64,000 bases of DNA from Saccostrea cucullata. Taxonomy: Eukaryota. The notes under the pieces were generated by a model. It saw nothing but the letters and a program-made list of their open reading frames with translations, did no database searches and was not told where the DNA came from. Shown piece by piece: positions 12,401-37,511 of the stretch (positions are counted from its first letter, which is position 1; the number at the start of each line of letters is the position of its first letter). Both the position numbers and the translations under genes were made by a program. The DNA is taken from contig NW_026936150.1 in assembly GCF_032062105.1 (NCBI RefSeq), positions 186,001 to 250,000 on the forward strand, given 5' to 3'.

Positions 12401-15400
12401 GTAACTCACTTTTTTTATACTCACGTTGTTGTAAACCCAGAACTGTCACCTATCATATCCTGTAAATCTGTTTTCGTCATGTGAGCAAAAAGATAAAACA
12501 ATCCTCTAAATACCAAAGTTTGCAGTTCTTCATAATCTTAGATAATTGATAGTTTTCTTAGGATAACTTTCAGCCAAAGCTTATTTTCTGAAATTTTAAT
12601 TTTTTTCTTTCAATTTTTTGCATAGCTGCAACCAAGAATTTTGCACCATTTTTTGTAGTATTGTTCACAATTTAGTCTGTGTATCTTTATAATATGTACG
12701 TTGAAAACTAAAAAAATTCAATATAGCACATATCAGCACATCAATATATACTCCACACTTTAAACATTCTTATTTTAAAATGTAAAAAGGTTTATGATAA
12801 ACGTGATGACTTGAACTTTTTAATCGTCAATTTTCTTTACTTATGTAACAATATTATATTTTTATCACCTGCACATGGATTTGTGTGTCTCAAATGAGTC
12901 CAGAAGAGCATGCTCTACGTATGAATAAATTCTAGAAAGAAACAAGTTGATGAAACAAGGATGCCAACAGTCTTGTTTGTAGTAACCGTTTTGCAAGACC
13001 AATGAGCGATACAATAGCCTTATAAGCAAATATAACCTACTGTTAGGTCAAATGCTGACAGGCAATTTTCATACGAATTGTTTGACCATTATTTACACAC
13101 TTAATTGTCTACGGATTTTCTGTTTTCTCCGATCAAGACAAGGAGCACACGGCGGGTGTGACCAGTTGGCTGGGGATTATCACTCCTCTATAGTACTTGA
13201 TCCCACCTCTGATGTTTTTGCGGTACTCCTAATTTGCATTGTTTAAATAGACTCTGAATTTGAATACTATTCGTTTTCTCCGCATTTCATTGCTATGGAA
13301 ACCTTTGAAAGGTAGTCAAAGTCATAGTCAAAGTGTTTCTTGTGACTCTTGTCCGTAAAATGCAAAACCTCAAACTTACTTTGTGCAAATGTATATTGAT
13401 ATTCAATCACAGAAATCTTTTTTGGAGTTTATCAAATGTTAATACCACTGATTGTTTTAGTATATATTTATGTGTTTTATTTATGATACCACTATAAAAT
13501 TAATATGAAATATGCATACTTGAGACAGTGGTATTTAACAGATGTCAGATTTTATTGATAGTAAGTTTTATGTAAATTTTAAATTATCATGTTATTATTA
13601 TATTTCTTGCAATTTTTTCGCCAAATCTTATTTAAAGAATTTTTCCACCTAATGTCAATCTAATTTTCGTAAAAGAATTCGCGCCATTGAATTATTCACA
13701 ATACTGTGGACTTTTCCATAAAAACTCAATTTGTACGAGTATCTGGCATTGAATAATACAAAGATTTGAACTACATTTAAATACTTATTAACAAAGAAAA
13801 GGAAAGTGTTAAAAATGCACAAGTGTGAAACTGGACATAAATTGTACTTTTATTACATGGGCAAAGAAAAAAAAGTAGCAATAGAAAAAGTCTGCTAGTT
13901 CCTAGAGATTAGCTGTTTGTGTGTTTGTTCTCTTGTACACAAATGTTAAACCTTAATTGTAATTTGTAACAAATTATATTCATAATTATCAAAGAATGTA
14001 TTTTTTTCAAAGATTTAATTGTATAATTGATACAAAGGAGTTGGTTACAAGTTCTAACAACTTAAGAGATAGAAAAAGTCCATGCAGAAAATTGACGATC
14101 CTGAATATCTTCTATGCCATGCGATGTAGTTTCAAGAATATTTTCTTATCTTTTATTCCTTGAATTGTTTGCATTGCCTTTATTGCATATTCTATCAATA
14201 AACACAAGTTCTGTCATTTTCATCTAAACATTCGATGATAAAGAAAGTAAACCACTTTTGTTCTTACATTGATTATTATTGAGAAATTCAGATCAAGAAG
14301 ATAAATTATTTTTTACTAAATGCACGAGAAGTTTATTGGAAAGTAGAAAAAATATTTTATTTACTAAGTTGTCTTTTTTGTGCTTTTCCAGTATATGCAA
14401 CAGTCGACCTACAAGCATGACTTTGTGCCCGCTAATGGGGTAAGTTTGACTTTATGGAATGTTGATTTTATTCCTTTGTATTCCAGTATATGCAACAGAC
14501 AACCTACTCACATGATTACAACTCGGGAGGGGTATGTAATTCTTCATAGCACCGCTTCATGTTAAAGAGCTGGGCAAGACAAAAGTTGTCCATAAATGTA
14601 ACAAAAACGATGGGCTAAAGATATTGTCGCATTGCTCTTTGAATGCTGAAAATAGCTAAGATGCCCTTTTGTAGAAGGGCATGCTCCAGTTTTCTTTATT
14701 TTATGTGTGTATTGTAGTAGCAGAAACTTGACGATTTTTGCTTTTTATGTTCTAGAAAAAATTATCATTTTTAATTTCAATGAAAGTTTATTTTTCAATT
14801 AATACCAAAAGTATTTTTTATTTACATGTATGTAATCACATATTAGGTGCTTGTGGTATTAATTTAAAAGATATTGATCAATAATCAATTTATGAGATAC
14901 TTTTTGAAAATCAATCATATTCCTATTCTAATCTCCCAATTTATTTCTATTTGAAAATTTTAATAGATAACTGACAATTTCAATTAGGCAACAATGGTAT
15001 GCAGTAGGAATATTTATTGATTGCTTTTTTAATGTCATGGCAAGCTTCAATATTAACAAAAGTTAGAAGAGAATTCTATAGTTTCATAAATATTTCCCTA
15101 TCAACTTTCGTTGTAATTTTTTTTACAACGCGACCTAGTTAAGTTATTAAAAGGTTTTGTAGGCAGAAACCCTTACTATATAAATATTTGATAAATCATC
15201 ATCTTTATATTTTTTGAGTTTTATAGAGTAAATCTTAAGAGATACTTAGTATTTTGATGAGAAATCTGAAGGCATATTCATACATGTTTTTCTATCAAAC
15301 AGGGTCGGGTATGTATTTCTATTTCAGTACAAAATACCACTAAACAGTAAAACATTTCTTCTAGTGTGAACACACGACATATCTAATAAGAACATTTATG

Positions 15401-18400
15401 TATTTTGTGGCGTTTTAATTGTTTTAAAAGCATTTTTATTGTTTAGTCATGCTAAAGATTAATATATAAGCGTCAAAACCAATTAACAAAGGAATGGCAT
15501 GAATCCCAAATGGAATAAAACCACCAGAACTTCAATCAGAATGACATATTCCTCATTTTGAAGATAATTAATGTAAAACCTATTCTGAATCCTTTCTCCG
15601 GCTTGAAATCCTTAGTCACGAAATATCGCACAAAGCAGTTACATGTACAGTATCTCATTCATTTTAAGGACAAGGTTGATTTTTTTATTTGAAAGATTGC
15701 ATAAAATTGATCAAAATTTTTTTTCTGTTAATCCTTGACATAAAGATTTATAATTGTTATATACTTTAACTTTAAAAGATGAAAGAGACTACAGCAACAT
15801 TAATTCATTATGTCCGAAAAATCTTAAGTAAAAAATCAATGTACATAGAAAGCCAATATTATTCAAGCGGAATTTTATTTCTTTTTTAGATTTCTCCAAG
15901 GAACAGACAGACAAACTACCCATACGGAGCAGATGCACCCAAAGCCGACATTGCTCCTCCTTACACCAACTTCCGGCCACGATTCAGCGACCCTCTCCCT
16001 CCGCATATTAGAGATGTAACGAACCTTATTCTTATCTCTTTTAAATTTTTAATTGCTGAAGCACTCTAAGGAGCGCTGATGTAGATGGGCTTAATTTTCT
16101 ATTCCACTGAAAGTCTACTGACATACGATTTCTGTTCAAATGTTATGACATGGTATTTTTGCAGTTTCATTCAATTCCTTCTTTCTACAATTTGGTGAAA
16201 ATATTTCATGGATATAGCTAATAAGGACTTTCATCCTATAATTCCAATTATTCTGCATAATGTATTTCATAAACCTATCATCTTGAAATATATTGCAAAT
16301 TATGGGATTTTTAATTCAATTATCCAAAATATTCAGATGCTTGAACATAATGTAAGTGATTTTAATTTCTTTGGATGAGAAATGTTAAAAAAGATATATT
16401 CTAAATATTCATAAAAACACCACAACATGTATCATTTGCCACCTTTATATCTAATAAAATACAATATATGAAATAATCAAATCCTTCGGACTCTGTGGGA
16501 AACTTTCAGATACTAGTACGAATAGAGATATTCAGCTAATCCTATCCAATAATTTTAAAATACTAAAGGTATAGGTAAATATTGAATGTAAAAATTCTTT
16601 TTAAAGCAGTTCTTTTCTTTATAATCGAATGCTCAATTTAAATTATTTAAAACTGGGAGAAATAAGAAAAAATATGAATAAATATTGAATAACATACACT
16701 GTATATTCTTTGGATTCAATTCAAATATCAGTATCACAATTAAATAAAAATGGAAGCGTTTATTCTATAGAATTCTATAAAATCGTTTGAGAAAGTGTCA
16801 TTTCTTACCCTGAAACATTCGTTTTTGTAGCTGGATGGCCAGAGATATGATGATCAGCCCTTAACGGATAGGGTGAGTCAGTAGTGTGTGCCAAATTCCA
16901 AAAATAAAACTCCTGGTCTCAATTTCATGTTAACATTTATCAATCATAAACCTTGTTTTACATTCTGATACTAGTTATTTGTGCCATCTTTCAGCAAAGA
17001 GTCAAGAGAGGAGAAGAGTGGATAGGCGGGGTAAGTGATTTAACATTCCTGTCTTATGTTTTACTTTTTAAATTGCTTTAAGGGAAGTAACTCGTACTGG
17101 AATTAAATATCTCTTATTTTGCAGAGACGATACGACGAGCCCCTAACAGACAGAGGCGTAAGTTGAAATAACACATTTACAGCACAGTAAATACACAAAT
17201 ATATCATTTTATATTTAATAATCCCAATGTGAATTGATTACTAATAAATACTATAACTTGGGAGAAAGATATTACAGTTGCACCTGATTATAGGTCTATA
17301 TTCCACCTAGAAAGGTATGTTTAGTACAACTTTTTGCTCCTGCATCTTGTGCATGTCTTTCTATAGTTTGATTATATCATAATCTGTCCCTCTCTATTTT
17401 TTCTAGGCCAATCGTCTTTTAAAGTTTTATTAGTAATTCTATTGTCGATACATTGAACTTGTCAGCAAGTACGACCTATCATTTAGTCAAATGCTGACTG
17501 ACGTTTTTCATACTTATTGTTGGACCATAATTTACACGCTGTATTGACGACGTTTTTATCCTGTTATTTCCCGATCATGAAAAAGAGCTCGCGGCAGGTG
17601 TGATTGATCGGCAAGGGATGCTCACCATGCCTTGGCACCTGATCCTACCTCTGATGTTTTAGATGTCCGTGTTTGCTCTGCTCCTAATTTGTAATTCCAA
17701 CGGATTTTTGAGCTTGAATACTGTTCGTTATCGTCCCATCTTTTATTACAAAATGTGTCAGCTTTTTAAATTTTATTAATGTTGAGATATGAAAGTAATG
17801 AAAAAAATATGACAAGAAAGGAGAGAGGATTATCAAACAATTTTTATGAAAATTTTATTCCATTTACAAAATTTTCGAAATGATGATTATACTTTCAATT
17901 TAAAAAAAAAAAAAATATGGGTAATTTTTGACAAACAAAAATATTGTGCTTCAAGCTTTTAAGAAGTCGATGCTCTTTTTTGGATTGTTTACATACGAAC
18001 TATTATAACCTGTTGCCAAATATTTTAGACTTTTTAACAAAATAAAATTTTAAAGAGCAAAGCTACAGCTTATAACTTGAAGTCGTATTATAATTTTATA
18101 TCTTCTAACATTAATAAAACATTGCGGAATTAATAGTTTTATTTTACTTATAAAGTAGAAAACATACAAAGTATTTTTTTTAGATCAAGAACATAGTACA
18201 TTTTTCACTAAAATAAAATCTCTAGATATAAATATTTTAATTTTCTAGTTGCATGCAAGCACTAACACAAGTAGACAACACATTTACAATCAATTATATT
18301 TTTAAAAGATTTTTTAGTCCCATTAATTGTAGTAATGTTTTTCTGAATATATATGTAGTATTAAAACCAAACTAACAACTAAGCTAAATGTCAAATTTGA

Positions 18401-21400
18401 TGATGTTGACATCCATATTTATTTGGCAATATTTTGTTATGGACTGCTTAGGTTTAAGTCTCTTAACGTATTTCCAAGAACATCGTCTGTGCAAGATAAA
18501 ATAATTTGATTTTACAGTGTTTTTAAAAGTCTGCAAGTTTGCAAACTTAATGGTAATTAAAGTGATCTTATAAATATAACCAATGGGTCTAATTAGATTG
18601 ACATGGTTTAAACATTTTGTAAAGTTATTTCTTTTTATAAGAGATTACTTCGTTAACTTCACTACAAAGGCCAAATATGACTGGTGAGATCAGACAAAAT
18701 CGGAAGTTTACTCCTATAATACAAGTGATTCCATTTCTTTTGTTTTAAGAGACCATGATCTCGATATGTATTTGTGAAATTGTTTACTCTTGGTTGTTCA
18801 TAGTTTAAGATTAAGTTAAACCAAATCCCTTTGTACTCCTTTAATGTTTCACTTTACTAACAGTTTCCTTCTCTCTGCAGCAATATTATGAAAGGGATCG
18901 AGGAAGAGATATCTCACCAAATAGGGTAAATATCGCTTATACTGAACAGCCTTCTGAAGCATTGCTTTCACCTATATACATTTTAGTTAGATATCACTTA
19001 TTGAACAGGCTTCTGAAATATTGCTGTCACATATGTAGGTTAATATCACTTCTTGAACAGGCTTCAAAAGTATTGCTTTCACCAGTGTAGTTAGATATCA
19101 CTCAATGAACGGTATTTTAAAACATTGCTATCACCTATGTAGATAGATATGACTTATTTTAAAAGCTTCTCAACTATTCTTTTTATCTGAGGGGATAAAT
19201 TACACAAAATTCTAAAATATAGCTTTCCCCTTAGCCTGTAGGTGTCACCCAGTAAAGAATATTACAGTAGTTCTTAACGTTCTGAAGTTTATAATATTTC
19301 ACAATCTGTGACTGATTGTCTTATTACAGAAGACTTAGTTCTCAAAGCATTTTGTAATTTTTTTTATTTATTTGAAAGAGAAACAAAAAAGCTAACAAGT
19401 CAGTGGTATGTTAAGTATATATAAAGGATAATAGGAGGGTGATGAAGCAATATTTTATTTTCAGAGAGATGATAGAATGTATAAACCGGAAGATGGTCGA
19501 TACACCTCATTGGATAGGGTATTCATTGTTCATGTCTTTAATCTTAACAACCATAGAGTGACTAAATGTTATATATTAAATGAAAATTTTTACTTCGTTG
19601 GTATTACCTAGAAAGTTATTGTTCATAAAAAAAACAAGAAAATGTAATTGTCTTTTAAGAAGTAATGCACGATATAAGCGTAATTATATATCTAATAAAA
19701 CTTCCATCTGTGTACAGATACATGTTAGGAACAGACATAATAAGTTCCTTTCAGAGTTTAAGAATATGACATATCATTTTCAGAGAGATGACAGAATGTA
19801 TAATATACGGGACGATGGTCGATACACGTCACTCGATAGGGTACTGTGTCTATGTGTCTGTCTGTGACTATCAGTAGATTGCTTGATTGCTAACAACAGT
19901 TTAACCATGTCTCTATTCATATTTACAAAACCTGAGTATTAATCTTGTATTTTCTTTTCATATTATTTACCGATATAATTTGCCTTCTTGCAAAAAAAAA
20001 ACAATAACAAAAAACAGACACACAATCTAGCTTTGTAGGTCTTATAAAACTATTAATCAACACATAAAAACAGAAACAATCATTAAATGACAAAAATATA
20101 CACAGAAAATATTTTCAGTTTTAAATAGGAAGCAATAATTAATAAACGAATCATAATTATATGATAATGTGAATTAAAATAGCATAAAAATATAATATTT
20201 CACGCAATTTTAATATACTTTTAATTACCTTTTTTCCTTTTCTTCCAGCAAAATCTGAGGTTGAGACGACACGCTTCACTTGATAGGGTATTAAGTAGAT
20301 ATATATCTTAAATGAAAATATAATTAGACTGCTTATGTTTGAATTATACAGAAATACTTCATTTTTGTGCCAAAATTGTATTAAAAAATCGTATATCAAC
20401 ATTTAAAGTGTTGTAAAAATATGCACAATTAAAAGTTGAAGATAAGTATTTTTTCCAATTATTTTGAATAATGATATGAGATTTAAATTTTCAACAGATT
20501 AAATTACTTATCGAAAATATTCAATCTTCCAGTATGATTTAATGGATAAACGGAAAGAAAACCTAAAGCAAGTACGTTTTCCTTTATTACAATTTAAAGT
20601 GTTTAAATCTTTACAGTTCGAACTTCCAAAACGAAGAAATGCAAGTATTAAACACTTTTTCAAAAATGTTGAATAATGAACTAAAAATATTAAATAGGAT
20701 TAACAAGGGATGTGTTATGGTCAAAAGGGATAAGAAATTTATAACCAACTAATGATAAAATTAGACATAACATATTTATAACTGCAAAAACTTGGTTTCA
20801 GTACATCGCAGATAGGCGGAGGGGGACAGATGAGGGAAGGGTATGTGCGGTGCCAGCTAAACTGTGTTACTAGTATTTCATTCTTTCACACAAGAAACGC
20901 CACGAAAGATTTTTTTCACACTCTGCTTTTATCTGCTTTTAATTAGTTTTGTTATATGTTTGTTTTCCTTTTCAGCTTAATCCAATAGAGCGCTTTTCTA
21001 ATGCTTGACATTTCAGCTTCTTTTACAACACCTGCTTGATCTACATCAATAGTTGTATTATTTCTCTGCTTCTTGCCAGGAAAAGTCTCTTTGAACATGC
21101 TGATATTTGAAGTGGTTTAAAATATAATCAATTGTTTGATTAACTATTGTTATTTTTTTCAGTACCAAGACAGAGGAATGAACGGTTCCCCAGAACGGGT
21201 AAGAAATATATAGATTTACTTCCTATTTGGAAATTAAACTGAAGGAATGAATCGTCTAAATCAAGGTAAATTAAATTGTTTTAATGTTTCATCTGACCTT
21301 TTCTTGCAGTATTACGATAGAGGACGTGACCTTGACCGAGGTCGAGGTTATGACAGAGCTAGGGACGGATCCCCCAGCAAGGTCAGTTGTTTTGATGGAG

Positions 21401-22402
21401 TCGCCCTCATCAAACCCTGCACAAAATACCTTTGTTACATTTATACTGAGTAAAAATCAAATACAATGTATATAAACAAAATGAAAATTAAAATAGAACA
21501 TATTTTCATAAAAATCTTCTAAACATGAACAAGATGTAACATAATGGCTTAATTTGTATATAAATATATGCTCAAAATGATTTTGAATCCTTTGCATAAG
21601 AATTAGAAATGGTAACTTTTTTGTTAACATTGGAATCAAAGTTTTGAATTTCAAATGTTTATATTATCTGTTTTTCTCAGTATGATTGGACACATCTGTC
21701 TTTGTTTTAAATACCCCACATGCCTCTATATTCGTATTTTGGCGTCTTTCTTATTAATTTATTAAGAGAATAGGGAGATAAGTCAATAAAAGTGCCCATA
21801 GTTTGAAACACGAAAATAAAGAAGTCAAGATTAAAAATAATCATTTATCTATAAAAGTTCTTTGACATAGTGTAAACATCAGCTTAATATTTCAAATCAT
21901 GTTGATAATGAAAACGCTGCCCCCGAAATAAAATTTCAAGAATCAATTAAATTTCTTAACAATTTTAAAATACTGTTGGAAATTTCTACTGACATTTTCT
22001 TGAATATGCTACGGCAATTTTTCAATTAACATGTGTATATTTCTATCAAATAATTTGATTTGATATTCATATTTGACGAATCGTTTTTTGATAGATTTAT
22101 ATTTAAGAAATCTTCAATTAACATTAACATGGTTTCATCCCCAATATATTGAATGTAAAAAGAATGGATAGAAATTTAATTTCTGATATATTTTATTATA
22201 GTTTAGGGAATACGATCAGGGTCGGAATGCGTATAATGGTTATAATGATCGGGTACGTATCGTAAACAAATCCATCATATGATCATTATTTTACAAGTAT
22301 TCAACTTTCTGTTTTTCAAATTATGTACATGGTGAACAAATTCTTGTAGGGTAATCATTGCTTTAAGTCCCTCTTTGTTAGTAGAAAGGATATCTGTTAT
22401 TA

Positions 22403-22482
<80 letters not shown>

Positions 22483-25400
22483 CATTTTATCAACTATGAG
22501 TGAATATTAAATATGTATATTCTGATAAATCATAGTAAATTTTGTGTAAATATCCATCCAATGTTTTTCCTTAGATTTAAACTTTCTTTCTGAATCTTTC
22601 CTTCTACTCACTAGTATCTAACATTTAGTATACATGTACCTTGTGATTTCCCTGTACAAGTAACCTCTCTGTACATGTGACTTCTCTGTATTGTCTGCTC
22701 TTAACTTTCACATGTGACGTCTTGTGTTTACAGTATTATGATGCATCACGTGATAAATTTAAATATCCAGACTGGGTATGCAAATCAATTTAACACCTAA
22801 CTGTGTTACATTATTAACAATCTTATAAATTTTCATACATTTATGTGATTCACAAAATCTAGTTAATTATAGATTATATATTAATATTTGTCATCAATTT
22901 ATAATCACATGTTTTGTTGAATAATAAAAAAGTGATCATATTCAACATTACACTATATTTTAGATGGACTTGACTTAGCAATACATTAGTTTTAGTTTAA
23001 GCTTCGGTACAATATAATGTCATTTTTGTTATACGTAGCTAACATCTGCATCATTGTGTGGATTTAGCAGAATATGAGGTTTTCTGGCATCAGATTAACA
23101 TAACTAAAACTTATACAGTGCACTACAAAGTTCACATAAAACATAAAATTTAGATGATTTTTAAAAGATCACAATTTTTAAAAAATTTTCTGTAGCAAAA
23201 CTATTTAGATTGTAAATTTTTAGCAATGGGTTCTAAAATACTTCCTTTATCTTAAATTCCTTTAAATTGCATGAAAAAAAGTTTCTTTTTATTTTTATTG
23301 CAAGAATATAAATGATAATGAATATGATTTATGATCTTATAAGATTAAGGTTAGATTTGTATTATGACGCTTATATATGTTTCTTTTCTTCAGTACGAGC
23401 AGCCAGTACAGCCCGGGATAGAAAGTTACGCGGACCACAAGGTCAGTCAAACACCACGGAACCTTTGACTTATGTTTATGCTTATGTAAAAAACGTATTG
23501 TAGGTACTAAAATGTTTGGAACTATAAGAATAATTTTTTTTCTAAACTAGAAAATGGCCGACAGAACAACCTACAAGGATTATGGGGAGGTAGGTTTTTG
23601 TGCATAATTTCTTTCACTATATTCATATGAAATCAAAATTTTCAATAAACCTACTGTATTATTATTCAGTTGTTTATACATGTATGTTTCAGTTTCTACA
23701 AGAAAAAATCAAAATGGAAGAACTTCGAAAGGTAATGATATTTCACTTTGATAACTGGAAAGGTTTTTATAAATCACTTTCCTCAATTTCCTTTAAAATG
23801 AGCTCTAACACAAGTTGATATAATAGCAAGAAAGCAAATCAAAGGAATAAAATAAAATTAAAGTATTTACACTTATTATCTGTGATTACACCATAGAGCT
23901 AAATACATACATTAATCAAAGCTCATGTCTTTCTTTAAATTTTTTAAAGTTGTCTCTCTTTAACTTTAAATGTCCGTTAAGATATTCTTACTTTGGTCAT
24001 TTGTATAGCACGTAATTTGTGAAATATTTGCGAAGATTACTTGACGTTAATTTCAATATAATTTTTCAGCAACCTTTGGAATATCCTGCAGCTAATCTGG
24101 TGAGTGATTATGAGTTTTATTATTGTGCATTTTAGGTATGATGAGCAGTACGCTTTTGTTTAATAAATTAAATCAAGATCTCTTTTTCACTTTGTATTGA
24201 TCCAATCATTTTAATTTTGGGGTTTTCTATTAATTTGTTTAAACGTCTGAAACAGAATAAAGGGATGTATATTTGATGTATATATTTACAAGGAGAAGAA
24301 ATATTAAATAATTTATTTTCAAAGTTTAGGGGAGAACAAATGATTCAAACACCTAATCATATATAAATTAGGGATACTTTATTTTCTAAATATTCTAGCA
24401 AAATGTACATGATTTAATACATTCGATAAATTCCAGCACTTAAATTCCAGCAAAAAATAGATATCAAAGCAGCCTTCGAAAAATCGATCGGTCTTTAACT
24501 GAAACATTAAAACAGGAGAAAGGTTTTAACATGGGTTTTGGTACCTAAAATAACTTAAAAATCGATAATGATTGAAAGAAATATTGCGCTTTTGATCAAA
24601 CGTCAATACTTCTATCTGTTTGTTTACTCCTGAACATGCGTAGACATCGTTAAAGCTACGAACAATTTAAATGTGTTTCAAAAGTCAACGGCGCTTTAAC
24701 TTGAATGGAGTGTAGGCAAAGTACCTGTCACTTTACATTAAATTTGATTTAATTTTCACGAGGCCCAGATATTTCTGAGATGTGTTTGCTTTTGTCGGGG
24801 ATTGAGTAAGGTATTAATGGATGTCATCATAGTGTGTCTTTTCTCGTGATTCATTGTCAATTTCAAAAGTAGACTCTGCTCTATTGTTGACACTCTGTAA
24901 ATCGGATCACATGGCTACCATAGATCCTCTGCGATACACAAACAGCAAGCTAGATACGGTGGAAGCGGGCATAGAGGTTGTGAAAGCAAAAGTGGGACTG
25001 GTGGACGAAAAAGTCGGAATAATGGCGGAGGACTGGAAGCTGTATGGCCCGAGAATCAATGCGCTGGAGGATAACATCCATTACCATGACACAAAGATGG
25101 ATGAGTTCAATACAAGAGAAGGGATCCACTCTGCCAAGCTTAGAACTCTAGAGGAAGAATTATCAAAACTCAGAGCACAAAACAATCGTCTCCAGGATGA
25201 GCTACATGTAATGCATAAATCACCTAGGTTTGTCGAAGATGATCGCGAAAAGCGAAAAAATAACGCAACTAATGATAAACATGATAATGAAAAAAGAAAT
25301 GTGGATTTTCAGAAGGGACAGCTGAGCCACAGAGACACCTATCGGGAGCAGATGTACGGACCGGACAACGAGAACAGGTATTACACCAGGGACAACCAGC

Positions 25401-28400
25401 GGTTCTCAAACAGAGATAGGGAAAGGGAACTGGAGGCCCAGATTAGACGGGAAATGGGGAAAATTGAAATGCATGACGGGAATTTCAAACCATGGGGAAG
25501 AGATGCTTATCAGAATCCCTCACATCATCCGGTAAGATTGCATCATGGACATTTGCTGTCGTCTGCTTTTTAACAACGACGTCATTGTTTTTGTAGCAAT
25601 TTCATCGTATATCCGTTTAGCCATTTCATTCTTTTCATGTAGTTTAGAGGGCAACATGGACTTCAAGATTTTTCAAATGGACAATCAGAGCCAATTTGGC
25701 TAAATGGATTGGATTTCAGAAGAGTTTTCCTTCTCTAAAATTGACTGCTATGGAAATATATCTTCTCTTCACATATCATTCAATAAAATTTCAAGCGCTC
25801 ACAGCCACAGGGAAAGTAAACTAAAGTGGAATTCCTAGGTTGCCTTAAAACCAGTGTACAGGTTAATGCAAGGAGATTTGGATGGATGATACAAAAGATA
25901 AATATTAGCCATATCTTAGTTTCGTAAGCGCTAGTTGATTTCCTTTTATTGATACATGGACCGTTAATCACCGTTTGATTATTTTCTTTACGTGGTCGTT
26001 GTCATAGCATGATGTACCTCAATGAAAAGATCCTTTGAGAAAATTTTCTGAGCGAGCTTACAATACGATTGAACTCCATTTCAGTCCGAGGAAGAAAATT
26101 ATATGCGTTTTCTTTGTGTACATTCGTTTCCAAATCCGCGTAAAAATCAAACACAAAAAGATTTATTAACATAACCGACGATATAGCATTATGCTTCACA
26201 CATTTTGATGATAAATTTTTGCAGAAGTAAAGGCAAGGCACGGAAGTTAACAAAAATTATAAAACAGCAATTAAATTCTTTAAATCAAATATCAAATAGC
26301 AGTAGAAATGAAAAGAAGATCTTTATATTTTTGTTCCTTTAGGGGATATTAAAATTCGTGATATTTTATGCACTTCATTCATATGTTTGTATAGAACTCT
26401 TTCAAGCTTACATGCAATTATTTATTTCAACCTGGTCTTGGTTCCTTTAGAATTTTATATCAATACTGCCTTTACAGGTTTCACTATTGATTTTACGTGG
26501 TATCTTTTATGAGATTTAGCTTGATATTGGATCTGTCTATCGATATCCCAAGTAATCGATACGGCTTCCATTTGTAGGGCCCTAACTATGTAAATGACCG
26601 CTACTTACGCCCAGAGGAGCGCCAGGTTTGATTCTTTTCGTGGGCTTATGTTCTTTACACGTCATCTGTATATAATCTCAGTCATTTACTCATCATCTCA
26701 GTCATTTATCCATAAATCATTTCAAAAAAGGCTTAATTTAGAAACATTTATATAAAAAACATTTTTGTTTCATATTCCATATCGTTTATCACGCATCTTC
26801 ATTATGCTTTGTGCAGGTTCGTTTTTTCGCATATTCATCAAGTGTATGCTTTATTTCACGAATGCTTGTATTCAGAAGTACTTTGTCGACGTTATTTCTT
26901 TGAAATTTGAATGCACAATTTTTGGATCAGTTGCAAAATTATTCAACATTTCTTCTTAAGAGAACTGAAAGTAAATCATGTCTGTGTGGAGTGGTTGTTG
27001 TAAACAGTTTGCATTGTGATGTCTTTTACTCTGAAAGTTTTTCTATTCGTAATTTACTAATTTATCAAGTGGAGAATCATATTTGAAATTTGAATGTTTA
27101 AAAAGTATGATTTTTCAGTTACGACATCAACTGGACTACGACAAGTCTCCTGTGACTGAAAGCAAACCCGAGAACCAGGTTTGTCACTGAAGCCCAGCTT
27201 AGGTGTTGTGACCTGTACAATTCTCCTCAAAACAATAGCATACATTATTCAGATCATTCAAAGTGCATGTTGGTGTGATTAAAGAAAGCAAGACCTTGCT
27301 TTTACCTAATTAACAGATATATTTTTGGATTTTCTCAGGCACCATGTTTTTTCTTTAGTGTTGAATTATAAATTCTTGTTTGAGAACATTTACATACCTA
27401 CGTTCAAAGAAGCAGGTGCCCTTGAGTAACCAATAAATGCAGTATAAATCAAATAAATCTTTATTTAGACAAACTTCCTATCATGTTTACTCACCTTACA
27501 TTCTCATTTCTTCCACAATCTATACAAATAAGACATATAAGGTGTATTGACATTGAATTTAATTCTGCAAGCGATACAATGTCATATATCAAAATGAGTC
27601 CAATAAATACATGACCGTCTTAAATTGAATGTTACATATCTTACTCTGTAAAAGATTTCACATTTTTTAACAATTAAAATTGACATCTTTTTCATTATTC
27701 TCTGTCTCTTTGTTCATTTTCTCCGGTTATACTCTTAAAAATCAGATTTAAGCTAAGTAAATAAAATAAGAATGGTGTTCTAGTGTCTGCATTAAATATT
27801 CTTGTAGGATGTTAGGCCCCAGACTGAACCAGCCCTTCCAATTCGGTCTGATTTCGAGGTATATAATCCGTATCATCGTGTGACGCTTTGGTACACAAGG
27901 ATGAATCTATGAACTGTCATGTTTTTGTGTGTATGGTTCACGACGGTTTTGCACTTGAATCAAAGTATAAATATATTCATTGTGTACTTTCCAAACTCTT
28001 GAGCATCAAACTGTATATATATTTATTTCTAGCACATCGGGTATCACCGGGGCGTGTGCCAGTATATTGTATGCATCTGTATAGGAATGGCGTGTATACA
28101 GAACAAATTATCAACATTGTACCTTTATTTCTATTGATATGTTTTGCAGCCCAAGTCTACCAACAGTGGTGTCTACCTCTTTGTCAGAACCAATAAACTC
28201 GCCAAGGCTGATGTTGTTAAAGCGCTTCAGGAGGGACGTTCTGTTCTCGCCAACTCGTACGGACAACTCAAAGGCATCGCCACTAGTAGAGAGGTAGGCC
28301 TTACTTCAGTATCAAGACATAGATAATTAAGGTACATTGGTGTGATTTTGCAAGCAATAATGCATTCCCAAGTTACTGGACGAAATACTGCTGGAAAAGC

Positions 28401-31400
28401 TTACTATAACACTTACCGCGATTTCGAAAATGCTGCGACATGGTCTAAATTCACGATAAATTTTGGCTTCTTGAACAGGTTGGTTTTTATTCATAAAAAA
28501 TCATGTTAACAACTTCAAAATTAATGATATGATGCGACTGCTTTAAGACTGGTTAAATTTCTTCAACGTCGCAGCATTTTCATCCAAAATTTATCGTGTT
28601 TTTCGTGTTTTTGACCATGTCGTGCTTTTTCGAAAGAAAATAAAAGAAGACAGAAAATGGAGAGTGTGAGTAGTTTATCTATCATATATGTAAATATAAT
28701 TGACAGTGAAATATATAACGATCTGCAGATTTAACCAAAATTTTCTTTTTTCTTTCAGATCAATCTTTTAGAGGGCCGCGCCGATGGATGGACACACAAA
28801 CCATCGACAGAACCCAACAAAGTTTGGGATATCGATGATATAGTGATCATCGTCTGGTTCCCGACAAGCAAGGAAGCGGAAATGTGGCTTTGTCACGAGA
28901 AACACTTTCGGAACGCATCTTTTCCAGAATTCTATGGGTCAGACATTGTTGTCTTGCCGATTAACTGGAACCCAACAAATGGTAATTTGATTCTGATTAT
29001 GATTAACATGTATTTCATTTTATTATATTATTAAACTTTAACAGAGAGAAAACGGTTCCAACATTGTTAAAATTAAAATATTTAATATCATTCTCTATGA
29101 TTCTTTTTAGATCGCCATTACCCTACATTCTTAGTGACAGAATACGAAGGAATCGTTGATCCCGATCAATTCAGGGAAAAATTTGTCACGAACATGAATG
29201 GCGTTTTGCAAAAACATAAAGCCGAGCGTTTTGTCATCCAGACAGTGGGGATCAAAAATCTCAGAGGAAACTGGTTTAAGAAGAGGAGTGTGGTTACATG
29301 CAATAGGTTCCCTTCCAGCGAAGCGGCCTACCAATTCTACAACGATCGTAAGTACAGAAGAAAGTAGTCAGGCAAATAGCCCGCCTTTGCTTCTCTATGC
29401 TATTTCAAGTTTACTGGACAAATTTGACCAAGTTGTTGAGTAACAACTTTCTTCTGTTTCAGCTGAATACGAGAACCTCAGAAGATCATTGCGGGACATA
29501 TCTAAAAATAGAACCACTGTAATGTTCACTCTAACAGAACGTCCTGTGTGATCACGTGACACTGGGATCGACTGTTGCCAAAAACACTCTACAAAGTCTG
29601 TGATATTTTTAACACATTGGATACGAACCTGTCGCCTGGTAGTTGTTGCGAATGTAACTTCTGATCAGTATTATTCGGGAGTAGTCAGCTTTAACCCTTA
29701 CATTATTCTTGTCTTTTACATTTTATTTCCATGAAAAAAAGGGTTTAGGAATAGAACGAAAACTTACAATAAATATCGCTAAGAAATAAAACAAAACATA
29801 GTTCAGATTTATATGTTCTAGTTAGAGTATGTGTAAATATATATACAACACATACAAAGGAAGGCTTCCTGTTAAAAGATCTATGGTTTGTTTTAAATCG
29901 TGTAGTCTTTTGCTACAATATTGAGAAATAACTCTACTAAACTTTTATACTAATATTCTTCCAACCTTTCATAGAGTTTCATATTTATATATTTTACATT
30001 TCATTTCTTGCACCTGTGTAAATTATTTATTTTTCACTATTTATTTGCTGTATGTATTGGGAAGGTATTCTTGAATAAAAGAATAAAAACAGTTAATCAT
30101 GTTTTTCTTGTTAAATTGTATACAATCATAACTTTATCGATTTTTATCACCAAATAATTTAATTTTAGTTGTAACCCGTCAGTTGATTGGGTAAAAGATT
30201 TAATCCATTTTGTATAACGTAAGTTGCCTACGTCACAATGAGTTACGTCAAAAACGTATTACTCCGCTTGACGTTACTTTTAAAATTTGCTGAATTTGAA
30301 GCCTTTTTCTGGAGGAAAAATTGTCTCATTGTCAACACTGAAATTAAATTATATTGGGGCGGTTTACGCTTTTTATATTCCGCTTCGGGGTTTATAAAGC
30401 GTAAACTCCCCCAAGTTATGTCATATCGGATAACATAAGTTGAAATAAGCTTCATTCCTTAAATACTGAGTAAGCATATGACATATACAAGTATTTAAAA
30501 CAAACTGTATTTTGGCCAGCTTCAGAGATATTTAAACATACCAATATATGGTAATATGACCTTTCAATTTTTATAGACTTGCTGTTCTCCATATCAAAGC
30601 AGGCCATCTATTGAAATAAAACATTTACCATATTGAAATAATTACTTTTATGTGATAAAAAATATCTATTTTTTTTTTAAAGCAATTTTTTAAATCGACA
30701 TAACATCATGTTATAGGATATTTGGATTTAATAATATCTTTTATTATATGATAGAATAATTTCCATCTCTCCGATTGGCTGAGATCCAACTATGTTAGAA
30801 AAATACTACGTTGTATTGACCTGCACGTGACGTTCCAGGTCAATACAAGGATTTATTTCCTCTACATTGATCTAAAAATAGATTGGGAAATTCCAAATTG
30901 ATACAAATTGATTTGGAAAGCTATTTAAACTACTATAACTTTTTTTTTCATGTGAAGAAAACATAAGCGAATATATATTTTCGGGTGAGGATGGTAAGAG
31001 GGGATGCAGGGACACTCCTCCAACACCTTTACTGAACAACAATTTTTACTTTTTGGCAGTCAGTTTTCCCTGATAATACTCCTTCCATTAAAAATCTATC
31101 CTAGAAAAAAGACTGACATTTTTTTTTCATGGCAACAAAAATTGATTAAAAAAAACTTTAAAAAAAATAAATACGACCTGTAAGGTTGATTAACATTTTA
31201 ATTCTGCTTCTCTCTTAATTGTATTTGGATAGGACTTAATTAAATGCAAACAAGTAATGGTTTTATCATTTTATTAGTGAATCATATAATAAAACAATTA
31301 TTGCTGTTTTTTTCAAATGATTTAGCCATCTTCGAATACAATATCACCTCGCCCTCCGGGCTCGGTGAATATTGTACTCCTCAGATGGCTAAATCATTGT

Positions 31401-34400: not shown

Positions 34401-37400
34401 GCTTATCAATTCAAATAGAAGACAAACTCTGTATGCAGTGATATTGCATAAGGGTATATTGCTGCATAAATAAGGGAACTTGGCAATACAATTGTTAAAG
34501 TCTTCACCTTATCATTAAGTAAATATTCAATTTAGTGTTAAAACAGATTTGTCAGACTCTGTGGTGTTTAAATTTTGAGTTCATAGGGATACATGGAATC
34601 AACATAGGAATGAAAATGAATATTTTTCGTCAGTAGAATATCGTCGCTATATTAAAATATTTAATTGAAGGCCATAGCGAAGTGCTTTTTCATTCCACGC
34701 AGAAGGCGTTTTAGGAATTTTCTCCTTTACATGAATACAAACATACATCTGCAAATAATGAATCGCAATAAGTTCCCATGGAAATTCTGACAAATTGTTG
34801 GAAACTTGATTTAAAGTATAGTACAAAGATATTGTCAATCATAAACCCAACCATCTTTCGAATAACATTTTGAGGCCAATAAGTGTATAAACCGAATGTT
34901 TTAATGTGAATAAACTAGTTCCATTTAAAGAAAACAATATTCTAAAATGATTTTGGTAAAATTTGGTGATTGTTAATAAATCCACGAATTAAGATCCTCT
35001 TTAACAATAGCCTTGTCAAAGTATCGTGAAATACTAGTAATGTCCCCGCAAATTAGCAAAAATGTTTTGTTCAGAAATATCTTATTCGCAGATCAATATG
35101 AATTCACGTATCATTCGTTATTTTTTACATTTCTTTGAAAAAGTAAATGTAAAATGGTAAAATCTTTCTCTGATTAAGTTAAGTTAGATGTGAAGCGAGG
35201 AATAACGAAAAGACAAAACATTATTTTCCGCTTTGCCATGTTGACAAGAAATTGGTAAGACCTGGTTAGCAATGCCACGAAACAGAGAGCTTTGCTTTTG
35301 CAAATTATTTTTTATATTAAAAAAGTCAAGCTTGAAAAGAAATGAATGATCGTGCATCCTTCTGCTTATTTTTACCTTTTTATCAAAACTGTTACTAGAA
35401 GAAAACACTTGCTGTGGCCTTCAACTTGACATTTAGATATATCGACGACGCATTGTCAATTAACAATGGTCATTTCCATTCCTACGTCGATACGATATAT
35501 CCTGGTGAGCTTGAAAAAAGATACGACAGAGTCTGACAAATTTGTTTCGTACTTGGATATTTGACTTGAAAAAGACTTTAAAGGTAATCTAACAACCAAG
35601 CTATATGATAAACGTGATGACTTCAACTTTTCTATCGTCAACTTCCCTTACTTATGCAGCAATATACCTTCATCACCTGCATACGAGGTCTATATATTTC
35701 AGTTGATTCGATACGCAAGAGCATGCTCTATGTATGAACAATTTCTAAAACGAGGTAAATTATTGATAATTTAACAAGTTGATGAAACAAGAGTATCAGC
35801 AGTCTCGTTTAAAGTCATCATTTCATAAGTTCCATGATACAATGACCTTGTCAGCAATACAATTTATCATTGAGTCGAATGCTGACTGACGTTTTTCATA
35901 CCAATTGTTAGTCCATTATTCATACACCGAATTGAGACGGATTTTTCCGTTATTTCACGATCATGACAATGAGCACACGGCGATTGTGACCGGTCACATG
36001 GGATGCTCACTCCAGCATGGCACCTGATCCCACTTCTGATGTTTCGGAGGTCCGTGTTTGCTCTGCTCCTATTTTGTATTGTTTTATGGACTTTGATATT
36101 GAATACAGTTTGTTATCTCCATATCCTTCTTCCAAGTAACAGCTAGCTTAAGAACATTAAGGGATACAATGTATCTGTGTTATGTCTTTATAGATTCAAT
36201 TGCTGGAGGGAAACGAGGGTTGGGATATCCATGCTCACATCACACGCACCGGCGACTACTGGTTAGAGCAGTCCCGAGAGTCCACAGAAATCAATGACAT
36301 CATCATCGTTATCTGGTTCCCGACCTTTAACGATGCGGAGAAATGGGTCATCAGCGAAAAGCACTTCAAGATCTCTAACTACCCTGACCCGTACGGAAGT
36401 GACGTTTTAATCCTGCCGTTAAATGATAGTCAGCCTCAGGGTAAGGCTATTTTGTGAGAGAGTGATAGCTAATGATTTAAACTAAGCAATTCTAGAAATA
36501 AAAATATATTTTCATTAAATTTTCTCTGTTTGTTGAGCTTAATAAGATTATAATTTAGCTTCCTTCTTTTCAAAGTAAAAAATATTTATTACCTGGAAAA
36601 ACAATTTCGTTCTCTACAGAATTTTGCTGCAGAAATCTTGTTTTATAATAAATGACCACAAGGTCCGTTCAGTCTAAAGTTTCTTAGCTATAAAAAAAAT
36701 TTAAAGGAAATATTTTTGTCAAAGATTTCAAATTATATATTCATTTATTTTGATTATGTATGTATTTGACAGAGAGGATAGCGTACACGTACTTAATGAC
36801 GGAATATCCACGGACAATGGACTCGGATCATTTCCGTGACGTCTTTGCTCCTAGGATTCGGGCTCTACTCCAGAAGAAGTACGGTATAAATGAGTTCTTC
36901 ATCCAGTCTGTCGGTGCCAAAGTGATCCGCGGGAGCTGGCTTAAAAACAACAGTATTGTCACCGGCATCCAGTTTCGGAACCGGCGGGAAGCCCAGGATT
37001 TCTTCTTTGACCGTAAGTATTTGACTTTATACGTGTATTGGTTGATCTTCTTTGGCCGGAAGTATTGGACTTGATACGGTGTATTGGTCGAGTTAGTGTG
37101 ACTTGTTCACAAAATTACAGTTAGTCCGCAAGTTTCAAATTAAATATAAGGATAGCGCTGATTTTTACAATACTTATTCTGAAAAATCAAAATGGCCACT
37201 CAATACTCAAGTATCCTCATCATTCTTTTGCTTTTTTGCTTGCATTACTATAAGATAGAGCTATGGGAATGCTTAATTCCCCCGTTTTTTTGCAATAAAA
37301 GTATCACGTTCTTTTGGCCGTCTACAAAATGAAATAAATTACATTGAACAGTTTTAATATATGATTATATATTATTAATAATTTTCTTTAATTTTCAGCT

Positions 37401-37511
37401 GAATATAGGCAAATCCGCCAGGACATTCACAGACGCATCGAAAACCTTCCGTTTTATACTAACAGGTTCAAACCGGTTAGTTTCCTGTTTACCTTGGATG
37501 CTTACGTGTAA
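7833..37511 (+). CDS. Modular microexon gene: low-complexity Y/R/D/G-rich N-terminus plus tandem DUF1330-like domains (overall span; modules listed separately)
   Basis: About 35 exons bounded by pyrimidine tract-AG and GT. From 14392 to 28293 every exon is a multiple of 3 and open in phase 0. The C-terminal exons translate to ...FPSSEAAYQFYNDPEYENLRRSLR, which resembles the DUF1330 consensus FPS.EAA.AWY.SPEYQ. The 5' end is less certain. Confidence 0.75.
10727..10856 (+). repeat. ~44-bp tandem repeat x3 containing the splice acceptor of exon 10848-10877
   Basis: gatgctcagctaatgtaactttttattatttcaggacaatatac repeated with few changes. Confidence 0.9.
12790..13290 (+). mobile_element. Penelope-like 3' fragment (intronic)
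   Basis: ttatgataaacgtgatgac...ggagcacacggcgggtgtgacc...tcccacctctgatg. Confidence 0.75.
14392..24099 (+). CDS. Array of phase-0 microexons: 14392-14439, 14487-14531, 15303-15308?, 15890-16015, 16831-16872, 16995-17030, 17125-17157, 17294-17314?, 18881-18925, 19465-19518, 19784-19840, 20249-20287, 20533-20571, 20802-20840, 21163-21198, 21310-21381, 22202-22252, 22734-22775, 23394-23441, 23551-23589, 23693-23731, 24070-24099
   Basis: Short GC/purine-rich islands in AT-rich introns, all with AG...GT, lengths divisible by 3 and no stops. Peptides include YMQQSTYKHDFVPANG, LDGQRYDDQPLTDR, RRYDEPLTDRG, QYYERDRGRDISPNR, RDDRMYKPEDGRYTSLDR, YQDRGMNGSPER, YYDRGRDLDRGRGYDRARDGSPSK, FREYDQGRNAYNGYNDR, KMADRTTYKDYGE. 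Confidence 0.8.
17410..17745 (+). mobile_element. Penelope-like 3' fragment (intronic)
   Basis: Conserved 3' motif ...gggatgctcacc...ggcacctgatcctacctctgatg...ccgtgtttgctc. Confidence 0.75.
18926..19200 (+). repeat. Degenerate ~52-60-bp minisatellite (about 5 units)
   Basis: Recurrent atatcactta(t)tgaacaggcttctgaa.tattgct.tcacc. Confidence 0.75.
22409..22478. repeat. (GA)n microsatellite
   Basis: Pure GA run. Confidence 0.98.
24911..25531 (+). CDS. Large coiled-coil exon (MATIDPLRYTNSKL...NPSHHP, 207 codons), probable alternative first coding exon
   Basis: ATG at 24911, heptad-like LRTLEEELSKLRAQNNRLQDEL, phase-0 donor CCG|gtaaga at 25531. The nearby AGs would enter in phase 1, so no phase-0 acceptor is evident. 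Confidence 0.75.
26578..28293 (+). CDS. Shared exons 26578-26625, 27119-27178, 27808-27858, 28150-28293; the last begins the first DUF1330-like repeat (GVYLFVR...GQLKGIATSRE)
   Basis: All phase 0-0 with canonical splice sites: GPNYVNDRYLRPEERQ, LRHQLDYDKSPVTESKPENQ, DVRPQTEPALPIRSDFE, PKSTNSGVYLFVRTNKLAKADVVKALQEGRSVLANSYGQLKGIATSRE. Confidence 0.8.
28422..28635. mobile_element. Fold-back MITE-like inverted repeat
   Basis: ttcgaaaatgctgcgacatggtctaaattcacgataaattttgg versus ccaaaatttatcgtg...gaccatgtcgtgctttttcgaa. Confidence 0.6.
28759..29551 (+). CDS. C-terminal cassette A (exons 28759-28981, 29111-29347, 29463-29551): completes tandem DUF1330-like domains
   Basis: INLLEG...IVIIVWFPTSKEAEMW / FLVTEYEGIVDPDQFRE...LRGNW...VVTCNRFPSSEAAYQFYND / PEYENLRRSLR...RPV*. 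Phases 0-1, 1-1, 1-stop are consistent. Confidence 0.85.
30745..31432. mobile_element. Possible non-autonomous Crypton-like element remnant
   Basis: 5' attatatgatag...gattggctgag and a 3' hairpin caatatcacctcgccctccgggctcggtgaatattg...aataattgtataat. The family assignment is from recall only. Confidence 0.35.
32920..34670. mobile_element. Two Penelope-like fragments tail-to-tail (32920-33510 +, 33710-34670 -)
   Basis: RT-end and 3'-motif matches on opposite strands. Confidence 0.7.
34013..34286. mobile_element. MITE with ~50-bp imperfect TIRs nested in a Penelope-like fragment
   Basis: tactattgtttgcagctaactgtaaagtttcacattacttcacgatct versus agatcgtgacgtaacgtgaaactttacagtcgactgtaaaacaatagta. 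Confidence 0.8.
35402..36120 (+). mobile_element. Penelope-like 3' fragment (~720 bp)
   Basis: FRYIDD...LYDKRDDFNFSIVNFPYLCSNIPSSPAY and the 3' motif gagcacacgg...ccgtgtttgctc. Confidence 0.85.
36194..37511 (+). CDS. C-terminal cassette B (exons 36194-36440, 36773-37012, 37399-37511): paralog of cassette A, DUF1330-like
   Basis: IQLLEG...IIIVIWFPTFNDAEKW...YGSDVLILPLN / YLMTEY...IRGSW...QFRNRREAQDFFFD / PEYRQIRQ...FTLDAYV*. Intron positions and phases match cassette A and the frames are intact. Confidence 0.85.

What the first reader, a model, noticed from the sequence alone, without database searches (positions are those of the whole stretch)
14392..24099. About 20 symmetric phase-0 microexons encoding a Tyr/Arg/Asp/Gly sticker-and-spacer tail
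Seen: 20 solid and 2 tentative exons, mostly 30-72 nt, all 3n. Many start with Tyr and end in (D)R (…LTDR, …SLDR, …YNDR), and several carry S-P-x-basic sites (ISPR, ISPNR, GSPER, GSPSK). So many independent AG/GT islands all being 3n and open in one phase is very unlikely by chance. Established: Tyr/Arg-rich disordered regions drive condensate formation, and SP motifs are proline-directed kinase targets. Inference: skipping exons could tune valency or phosphoregulation one short motif at a time.
Basis: partly seen in the sequence, partly recalled or inferred. Interest (0 to 1): 0.8.

Follow-up and report, generated by a model that had tools for sequence, protein, structure and literature searches.

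The report
Splice-tunable disordered tail from short exons
The stretch is a real, already annotated but unstudied oyster gene in which about 30 consecutive tiny in-frame exons build a conserved, disordered Arg/Asp/Tyr-rich region whose length and motif count are varied by exon skipping; it is an unusual gene layout, but of a known kind.

Summary
Observation confirmed. The window is Saccostrea cucullata, and the gene is RefSeq LOC134244914 ("uncharacterized protein", at least 24 isoforms). Isoform X5 matches the window's exons at 100%.

- **Exons:** 22 annotated exons lie in 14392-24099 (21-126 nt). All are 3n and phase 0. They belong to a run of 29 such exons (11246-28293).
- **Alternative splicing:** 17 RefSeq isoforms show two mutually exclusive exon pairs and several cassette blocks. 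The same cassettes are alternative in Crassostrea, Magallana and Ostrea annotations.
- **Transcript evidence:** an intron-less Magallana contig maps block by block onto the orthologous M. gigas exons and skips the same blocks.
- **Conservation:** exon lengths are identical in M. gigas. A scallop orthologue also has about 26 phase-0 short exons. Purifying selection is strong (omega about 0.07, dS saturated).
- **Protein:** the region is R 17%, D 15%, Y 10%, G 8%, and AlphaFold2 predicts it disordered. It precedes a tandem DUF1330/ferredoxin-like domain.

Interpretation partly supported. Skipping changes tail length (291-398 aa), Tyr (25-38), Arg (38-61) and RxxSLDR motifs (0-3). The four SP-x-basic sites are constitutive. 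Condensate formation is untested.

No RNA runs were listed for this species. The scan's notes list other microexon arrays elsewhere in this genome (not checked here).

The parts
8209..8269 (+). probable 5'UTR exon (approximate borders)
   Evidence: 79% match to bases 8-65 of the Magallana transcript contig L007
10869..10877 (+). start codon and first three codons, donor GTAAGT; the 5' border of this exon (about 10848) is inferred only
11246..11263 (+). 18-nt alternative exon (isoform X4), phase 0
12371..12400 (+). 30-nt cassette exon (14 of 17 isoforms)
14392..14439 (+). 48-nt exon, mutually exclusive with the next one
14487..14531 (+). 45-nt paralogous exon after a 47-nt intron; never included together with 14392-14439
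15890..16015 (+). 126-nt constitutive exon carrying the first SP site
16831..16872 (+). 42-nt exon ending in LTDR
16995..17030 (+). 36-nt constitutive exon
17125..17157 (+). 33-nt cassette exon (skipped in X11 and X23)
17294..17314 (+). 21-nt cassette exon (13 of 17 isoforms); alternative in all oyster taxa compared
18881..18925 (+). 45-nt constitutive exon with an SP-N-R site
19465..19518 (+). 54-nt cassette exon with R-x-x-S-L-D-R
19784..19840 (+). 57-nt cassette exon, duplicate of the previous one (87% over the exon and splice sites only)
20249..20287 (+). 39-nt cassette exon with R-R-x-S-L-D-R
20533..20571 (+). 39-nt cassette exon
20617..20640 (+). 24-nt alternative exon (X17) with a GC donor, 45 nt after the previous exon; never included together with it
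20802..20840 (+). 39-nt cassette exon
21163..21198 (+). 36-nt constitutive exon with an SP-E-R site
21310..21381 (+). 72-nt constitutive exon, the R/D/G/Y-richest, with an SP-S-K site
22202..22252 (+). 51-nt cassette exon (skipped in X13 and X24)
22734..22775 (+). 42-nt cassette exon (skipped in X13 and X24)
23394..23441 (+). 48-nt constitutive exon
23551..23589 (+). 39-nt constitutive exon with a T-T-Y-K-D-Y-G motif shared with scallops
23693..23731 (+). 39-nt constitutive exon (weak predicted helix)
24070..24099 (+).
24727..25312 (+). alternative first exon from an internal promoter: 5'UTR from about 24727, ATG at 24911, coiled-coil N-terminus; runs on into 25313-25531
25313..25531 (+). 219-nt shared exon, entered at an internal acceptor by the microexon isoforms; phase 0
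26578..26625 (+). 48-nt alternative exon (X12 and X18)
27119..27178 (+). 60-nt alternative exon (X12)
27808..27858 (+). 51-nt alternative exon (X12)
28150..28293 (+). 144-nt constitutive exon, start of the folded C-terminal domain; last of the phase-0 run
28759..29551 (+). first alternative 3' cassette, three exons (28759-28981, 29111-29347, 29463-29551, phase 1), DUF1330; used by X9
36194..37511 (+). second alternative 3' cassette, three exons (36194-36440, 36773-37012, 37389-37511); used by the other 16 isoforms

Best explanation
The stretch is the N-terminal half of Saccostrea cucullata LOC134244914, a gene family found in oysters and scallops (Pteriomorphia). A run of 29 short exons, all starting and ending between codons, encodes a 290-400-residue region. 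That region is Arg/Asp/Tyr/Gly-rich, carries well-mixed charges and is predicted disordered. It precedes a tandem DUF1330 (ferredoxin-like alpha+beta barrel) domain. Because every exon is phase 0 and 3n, any subset can be left out without breaking the frame. The gene uses this through two mutually exclusive exon pairs and several conserved cassette blocks. The resulting isoforms differ in tail length, in Tyr/Arg count and in the number of R-x-x-S-L-D-R motifs, which look like sites for kinases that prefer basic residues. A core carrying four SP-x-basic sites is always kept. Shown: the exons, their phases, the isoforms, the conservation and the predicted disorder. Inferred: the tail is a splice-adjustable, probably phospho-regulated, multivalent interaction region that sets how the C-terminal domain is tethered to or clustered with partners. 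Condensate formation is one possible form of this.
For: - 100% exon-by-exon match to RefSeq X5.
- Exon-by-isoform matrix for 17 isoforms.
- 29 consecutive 3n phase-0 exons, 28 AG/GT and one AG/GC.
- The same cassettes are alternative in separately annotated C. virginica, Magallana and O. edulis.
- M. gigas has identical exon lengths.
- A spliced Magallana transcript contig maps onto the M. gigas locus in 18 blocks whose ends coincide with the exon ends and skips the cassette blocks.
- A scallop orthologue has about 26 phase-0 short exons.
- Omega is about 0.07 for the array against 0.05 for the domain exons. Cassette exons have lower synonymous divergence (pS 0.56 against 0.77).
- Composition, charge mixing and motifs.
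- Per-isoform counts.
- pLDDT about 30 over residues 1-396.
- DUF1330 at 33.6 bits against a 23-bit cut-off in X9.
- Foldseek hits to tandem ferredoxin-like proteins.
Against: - No RNA reads of this species could be examined, so the S. cucullata isoforms rest on RefSeq models.
- Gnomon may combine local splice events into combinations that never occur in full.
- No expression, localisation or partner data exist, and no papers were found.
- dS is saturated, so omega is only approximate.
- High positional conservation is unusual for a purely compositional sticker-and-spacer region.
Confidence: 0.55

Rival explanations
1. The tail is not a generic condensate-forming region. It is an ordered series of specific short binding motifs that dock on, or fold upon, a defined partner such as a filament or a repeated scaffold. 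Splicing then changes the number of docking modules.
For: Tail identity between oyster genera is 72-79%, equal to or above the folded domain at 63-75%. Omega is about 0.07. Several motifs survive to scallops at about 25% overall identity: an N-terminal Y-x-Q-Q-T-T-Y-K-x-D-Y, T-T-x-K/R-D/E-Y-G-D/E-F, P-L-T-D-R and H-D-G-N-F-K-P-W/Y. Charges are more evenly mixed than in shuffles (0.78 against 1.06 +/- 0.07), which argues against charge-block-driven coacervation.
Against: No Pfam, PDB-sequence or Atlas relative was found for the tail. No partner is known. AlphaFold2 shows only three weak helices.
Confidence: 0.3
2. The many isoforms are mostly splicing noise or annotation combinatorics around hard-to-define tiny exons. 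The gene works with essentially one tail.
For: Isoforms are computational models. Very short exons are prone to skipping.
Against: The same exons are alternative in four or five separately annotated taxa. Cassette exons show reduced synonymous divergence, as regulated alternative exons usually do. Independent transcript contigs carry the skipped forms.
Confidence: 0.13
3. The islands are chance AG/GT-bounded open stretches, not exons.
For: None beyond the AT-rich background producing some decoys, for example 14756-14827 and 22615-22659.
Against: 100% match to RefSeq proteins. Orthologous exons of identical length in M. gigas. Transcript contig. Strong purifying selection.
Confidence: 0.01

Closest known systems
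Schistosoma micro-exon genes (MEGs)
   Same: Most of the coding region is made of short symmetric exons whose lengths are multiples of 3, separated by much longer introns. Exon skipping gives protein variants (bioRxiv 10.1101/2023.06.21.545858, abstract seen).
   Different: MEGs encode small secreted proteins of a parasite. Here there is no signal-peptide-like N-terminus, and the array is fused to a folded DUF1330 domain. It is under strong purifying selection and conserved from oysters to scallops. No sequence relationship was found.
Titin PEVK, tropoelastin and fibrillar-collagen exon arrays (from general knowledge, not tested here)
   Same: These are long runs of in-phase short exons, each encoding one module of a repetitive, largely unstructured segment. 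In titin and elastin, differential exon inclusion sets segment length.
   Different: Composition (P/E/V/K, hydrophobic/cross-link, Gly-X-Y) and function (extracellular or sarcomeric elasticity) are unrelated. This tail is an R/D/Y polyampholyte of unknown function.
[quoted passage not shown]
   Same: R and D dominate, net charge is near zero and charges are well mixed. In R-MCDs, condensation depends on length and on arginine (bioRxiv 10.1101/771592). One Magallana isoform is even auto-named after ZC3H13.
   Different: The paper's search criterion was tested here as a fraction of charged residues of at least 0.7 over more than 60 residues. The comparison sign did not survive in the held text, so 'at least' is my reading. 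It is not met: the maximum is 0.53. About 10% Tyr is not a feature of R-MCDs.
Tyr/Arg 'sticker' low-complexity domains of FUS-family proteins
   Same: [quoted passage not shown]
   Different: Prion-like domains are poor in charge and rich in G/S/Q/N (from general knowledge, not tested here). This tail has a fraction of charged residues of 0.38 and 13-15% Asp, and its sequence, not only its composition, is conserved.
Vertebrate neuronal microexons (3-27 nt; from general knowledge)
   Same: They are frame-preserving, conserved, alternatively included and alter interaction surfaces.
   Different: Those are isolated single exons within ordinary genes. Here there is an uninterrupted array, and only 3 of the 22 exons are 30 nt or shorter.

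Membership tests
Schistosome-type micro-exon gene (MEG) | Bulk of the coding sequence is in short symmetric exons that are multiples of 3 | tested here: met
29 consecutive 3n phase-0 exons of 18-219 nt.
Schistosome-type micro-exon gene (MEG) | Encodes a secreted protein with an N-terminal signal peptide | tested here: not met
   By inspection, the first 40 residues of P0081 are polar with no hydrophobic core. No signal-peptide predictor was available.
Schistosome-type micro-exon gene (MEG) | Sequence relationship to schistosome MEG proteins | tested here: not met
   Searches returned only bivalve proteins.
Arginine-enriched mixed-charge domain (Greig et al., 10.1101/771592) | [quoted passage not shown] | tested here: not met
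   The best 60-residue window has FCR 0.53 (18 positive, 14 negative). The ratio criterion is met but the FCR criterion is not.
Pfam DUF1330 (PF07045) | Score above the Pfam gathering cut-off (23 bits) | tested here: met
   Isoform X9 (first 3' cassette) scores 33.6 bits. The second cassette scores 18.5 bits, below the cut-off. This concerns the C-terminal domain, not the tail.
Dimeric alpha+beta barrel / tandem ferredoxin-like fold | Two beta-alpha-beta-beta-alpha-beta halves in one chain | tested here: inconclusive
   The AlphaFold2 model of residues 397-638 has a matching order of strands and helices, but pLDDT is only 40-87 from a 9-sequence alignment. Foldseek E-values are 2.5e-6 to 1e-3 and TM about 0.5 to tandem ABM-like proteins such as 5f9p, 9kdp, 3f44 and 2pgc.
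Microexon (strict, 27-30 nt or shorter) | Exon length | tested here: not met
   Only 3 of the 22 exons in the range are 30 nt or shorter. 18 of 22 are 51 nt or shorter, which meets the looser definition.
Intrinsically disordered region | No stable predicted fold, low hydrophobic content | tested here: met
   pLDDT is below 50 for nearly all of residues 1-396. A/I/L/M/F/V/W/C make up 19% against 36% in the domain. No dedicated disorder predictor was available.

The most novel reading that the evidence does not exclude
This would be a free-living-animal, intracellular counterpart of the schistosome micro-exon genes. An all-phase-0 short-exon array has been kept since before oysters and scallops split. 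Conserved combinatorial splicing would then programme the valency and phospho-switch count of an Arg/Tyr-rich disordered scaffold, setting whether and how the attached DUF1330 domain condenses or clusters.
Probability: 0.15. Interest if true: 0.7.

Novelty: new member of a known kind. Interest (0 to 1): 0.42.

Why it matters
The locus is a clean natural example of how intron phase makes a disordered region modular. There are 29 exons in a row that can each be removed without breaking the frame. Cassette choices are conserved across oyster genera, and the architecture is shared with scallops. The constitutive and optional motifs separate neatly: the SP sites are always present and the R-x-x-S-L-D-R motifs are optional. 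That gives a tractable system for asking whether splicing sets the valency of a disordered region. The gene family is unstudied and restricted to bivalves as far as the searches reached. Its folded domain (DUF1330) has no known function.

Tried and rejected
- **RNA reads of this species:** The look-up of sequencing runs listed no run, so read laying was not used and per-exon inclusion could not be measured.
- **Joined exon model:** I built and submitted none. Exon pieces went to the tools by reference. Whole-protein steps used public RefSeq proteins returned by the searches. Exon letters were joined only inside local scripts, for composition and dN/dS counts.
- **Relatives of the tail:** Pfam, PDB-sequence and ESM Atlas searches found nothing usable. 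A resemblance of the T-x-Y-x-x-D-F/Y motifs to motifs of ciliary microtubule proteins, recalled from memory, found no support and is dropped.
- **R-MCD and MEG membership:** both failed a defining feature.
- **Literature:** searches for the LOC identifiers, for DUF1330 with oyster, and for the two run accessions found nothing.
- **Genomic look-up of the Ostrea edulis isoform:** failed. M. gigas and Ylistrum loci were used instead.
- **Missing Crassostrea/Magallana exons:** remnants of the extra 36-nt and 15-nt exons were sought in the corresponding S. cucullata introns and not found.
- **Duplicated exons:** the exons at 19465 and 19784 share no intron similarity beyond the splice sites, so a recent duplication cannot be claimed.
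- **Paralogues:** no second locus was found in this genome.
Full report
**What is there.** Each is a multiple of three long and open in phase 0. A HMMER search with the large exon downstream (window:24872-25531) returned a 612-residue Crassostrea virginica protein that strings the same peptides together in the same order. A word search with that protein found dozens of isoforms of one gene in C. virginica, C. angulata, Magallana gigas, Saccostrea cucullata, S. echinata and Ostrea edulis, plus distant scallop relatives.

Isoform X5 of S. cucullata LOC134244914 (P0081, XP_062583143.1) matches the window exon by exon at 100%. The window is therefore this species and this gene. The genome search places it on contig C18287 and finds no second locus.

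**Exon catalogue and chance.** I threaded 17 S. cucullata isoforms through the window. All 29 are 3n and phase 0; 28 are AG/GT and one is AG/GC.
- Lengths in the range run from 21 to 126 nt. 18 of 22 are 51 nt or shorter, and 3 are 30 nt or shorter.
- The tentative 21-nt exon 17294-17314 is real. A 6-nt island at 15303-15308 is used by no isoform.
- Only 7% of comparable intronic AG..GTR islands are both 3n and open.
- Exons are 46% GC and 60% purine, against 27.5% and 48% in the introns.
- Frame-breaking exon borders appear only in the C-terminal domain exons.

**Alternative splicing.**
- Exons 14392-14439 and 14487-14531 are 47 nt apart and are never included together.
- The same holds for 20533-20571 and the 24-nt GC-donor exon 20617-20640, which are 45 nt apart.
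- Cassettes are 12371, 17125, 17294, the pair 19465 and 19784, the block 20249-20840 and the pair 22202 and 22734.
- The 219-nt exon 25313-25531 can be replaced by 26578, 27119 and 27808.

Per-species alignments of isoforms show the same segments as alternative in C. virginica (23 isoforms), Magallana/C. angulata (40) and O. edulis (5).

No RNA run was listed for this species, so the S. cucullata isoforms rest on RefSeq models. In Magallana there is direct transcript evidence. Logan contig L007 (SRR12614113; 1548 nt, with one uninterrupted 457-codon frame) maps at 96-100% identity onto the M. gigas locus L009. It maps in 18 blocks whose ends coincide with the exon ends, and it skips the orthologues of the cassette blocks. 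Contig L008 (SRR8325612) shows a second promoter inside the intron after the last microexon. That promoter gives a coiled-coil N-terminus in place of the microexon tail.

**Conservation.**
- The M. gigas locus has the same exon lengths one for one (30, 48, 126, 42, 36, 33, 21, 45, 57, 39, 39, 39, 36, 72, 51, 42, 48, 39, 39, 30), plus two extra short exons.
- Against M. gigas, the array has pN 0.119 and pS 0.69 (saturated), which gives omega about 0.07. The domain exons give 0.05.
- Cassette exons have lower synonymous divergence (pS 0.56) and higher non-synonymous divergence than constitutive ones.
- Protein identity between oyster genera is 72-79% in the tail and 63-75% in the folded domain.
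- The scallop Ylistrum balloti (order Pectinida, against Ostreida for the oysters) has an orthologue with about 26 phase-0 short exons. These include three tandem 66-nt plus 24-nt exon pairs. The architecture therefore predates the oyster-scallop split and grows by in-phase exon duplication.
- Scallop proteins keep a few motifs at about 25% overall identity.

**The protein.**
- Residues 72-318 of X5 are R 17.4%, D 14.6%, Y 10.1% and G 8.1%.
- Over residues 1-391, the fraction of charged residues is 0.38 and net charge per residue is 0.02. Charges are more evenly mixed than in shuffles.
- AlphaFold2 with a 9-sequence alignment gives pLDDT about 30 over residues 1-396, with only three weak helices. 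It gives a moderately confident tandem beta-alpha-beta domain after that.
- Foldseek matches this domain to tandem ferredoxin-like (ABM-type) proteins.
- Pfam finds only DUF1330, above the cut-off in the first 3' cassette.
- The tail has no Pfam, PDB or Atlas relative.

**What splicing changes.** Across the 17 isoforms the tail is 291-398 residues long, with 25-38 Tyr, 38-61 Arg and 0-3 S-L-D-R motifs. The SP-x-[KR] count is always 4. The SP sites lie in constitutive exons, and two of them are invariant even in scallops. All three R-x-x-S-L-D-R motifs lie in cassette exons.

**Reading.**
- The tuning idea is supported at the level of annotated and assembled transcripts, and by its conservation across taxa.
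- It works mostly in blocks of exons and does not touch the SP sites.
- Condensate formation remains inference. Tyr and Arg are described drivers of phase separation (10.1101/2024.02.15.580391), and R/D repeats condense in a length-dependent way (10.1101/771592). However, the tail fails that paper's mixed-charge-domain criterion as I read it (maximum FCR 0.53 against 0.7).
- Its residue-level conservation fits specific docking motifs at least as well.
- The nearest architectural analogues are the schistosome micro-exon genes (10.1101/2023.06.21.545858) and, from general knowledge, titin PEVK and tropoelastin exon arrays. This gene shares their logic but not their sequence, location or composition.

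**Novelty and limits.** The gene is annotated, but no paper on it was found. The scan's own notes list other microexon arrays in this genome (not checked here), so such arrays may be common in this oyster.

I made no joined exon model for any search. Exon pieces were sent by reference, and whole proteins were public records returned by the tools.

Noticed in passing
window 24727-25531: An internal promoter and alternative first exon (ATG at 24911) give a coiled-coil N-terminus that replaces the whole microexon tail. This is supported by a Magallana transcript contig and by short proteins in other oysters.
   Followed up: partly
window 28759-29551 and 36194-37511: Two paralogous three-exon 3' cassettes encode alternative second parts of the C-terminal DUF1330-like domain. 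Isoform X9 uses the first and the other 16 isoforms use the second.
   Followed up: partly
window 14440-14486 and 20572-20616: Introns of 47 and 45 nt separate two exon pairs that are never included together in any of the 17 isoforms. The second pair includes a GC-donor exon. Whether such introns are too short to be spliced in oysters was not tested.
   Followed up: partly
window 44000-50000: A GC-richer block (43-45% GC) holds reverse-transcriptase-, RNase H- and integrase-like open frames split over several frames. It looks like a Ty3/gypsy-type retrotransposon copy downstream of the gene. It was only observed.
   Followed up: no
window about 1-110, 2320-2450, 3190-3310, 13130-13230, 17560-17680, 33330-33470, 35950-36090: A short interspersed repeat sharing a conserved core recurs in both intergenic and intronic DNA of this locus.
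   Followed up: no
window 580-665 and 22408-22478: Long (GA)n microsatellites. The second lies in the intron between exons 22202 and 22734.
   Followed up: no
L010 29272-31574 (Ylistrum balloti): Three tandem copies of a 66-nt plus 24-nt exon pair, all phase 0, encode a repeated module in the scallop orthologue's linker. The array grows by in-phase duplication of exon pairs.
   Followed up: partly
L009 5582-5596 and 7875-7910 (M. gigas): Magallana/Crassostrea have two extra phase-0 exons (15 and 36 nt) with no detectable counterpart in the S. cucullata introns.
   Followed up: partly
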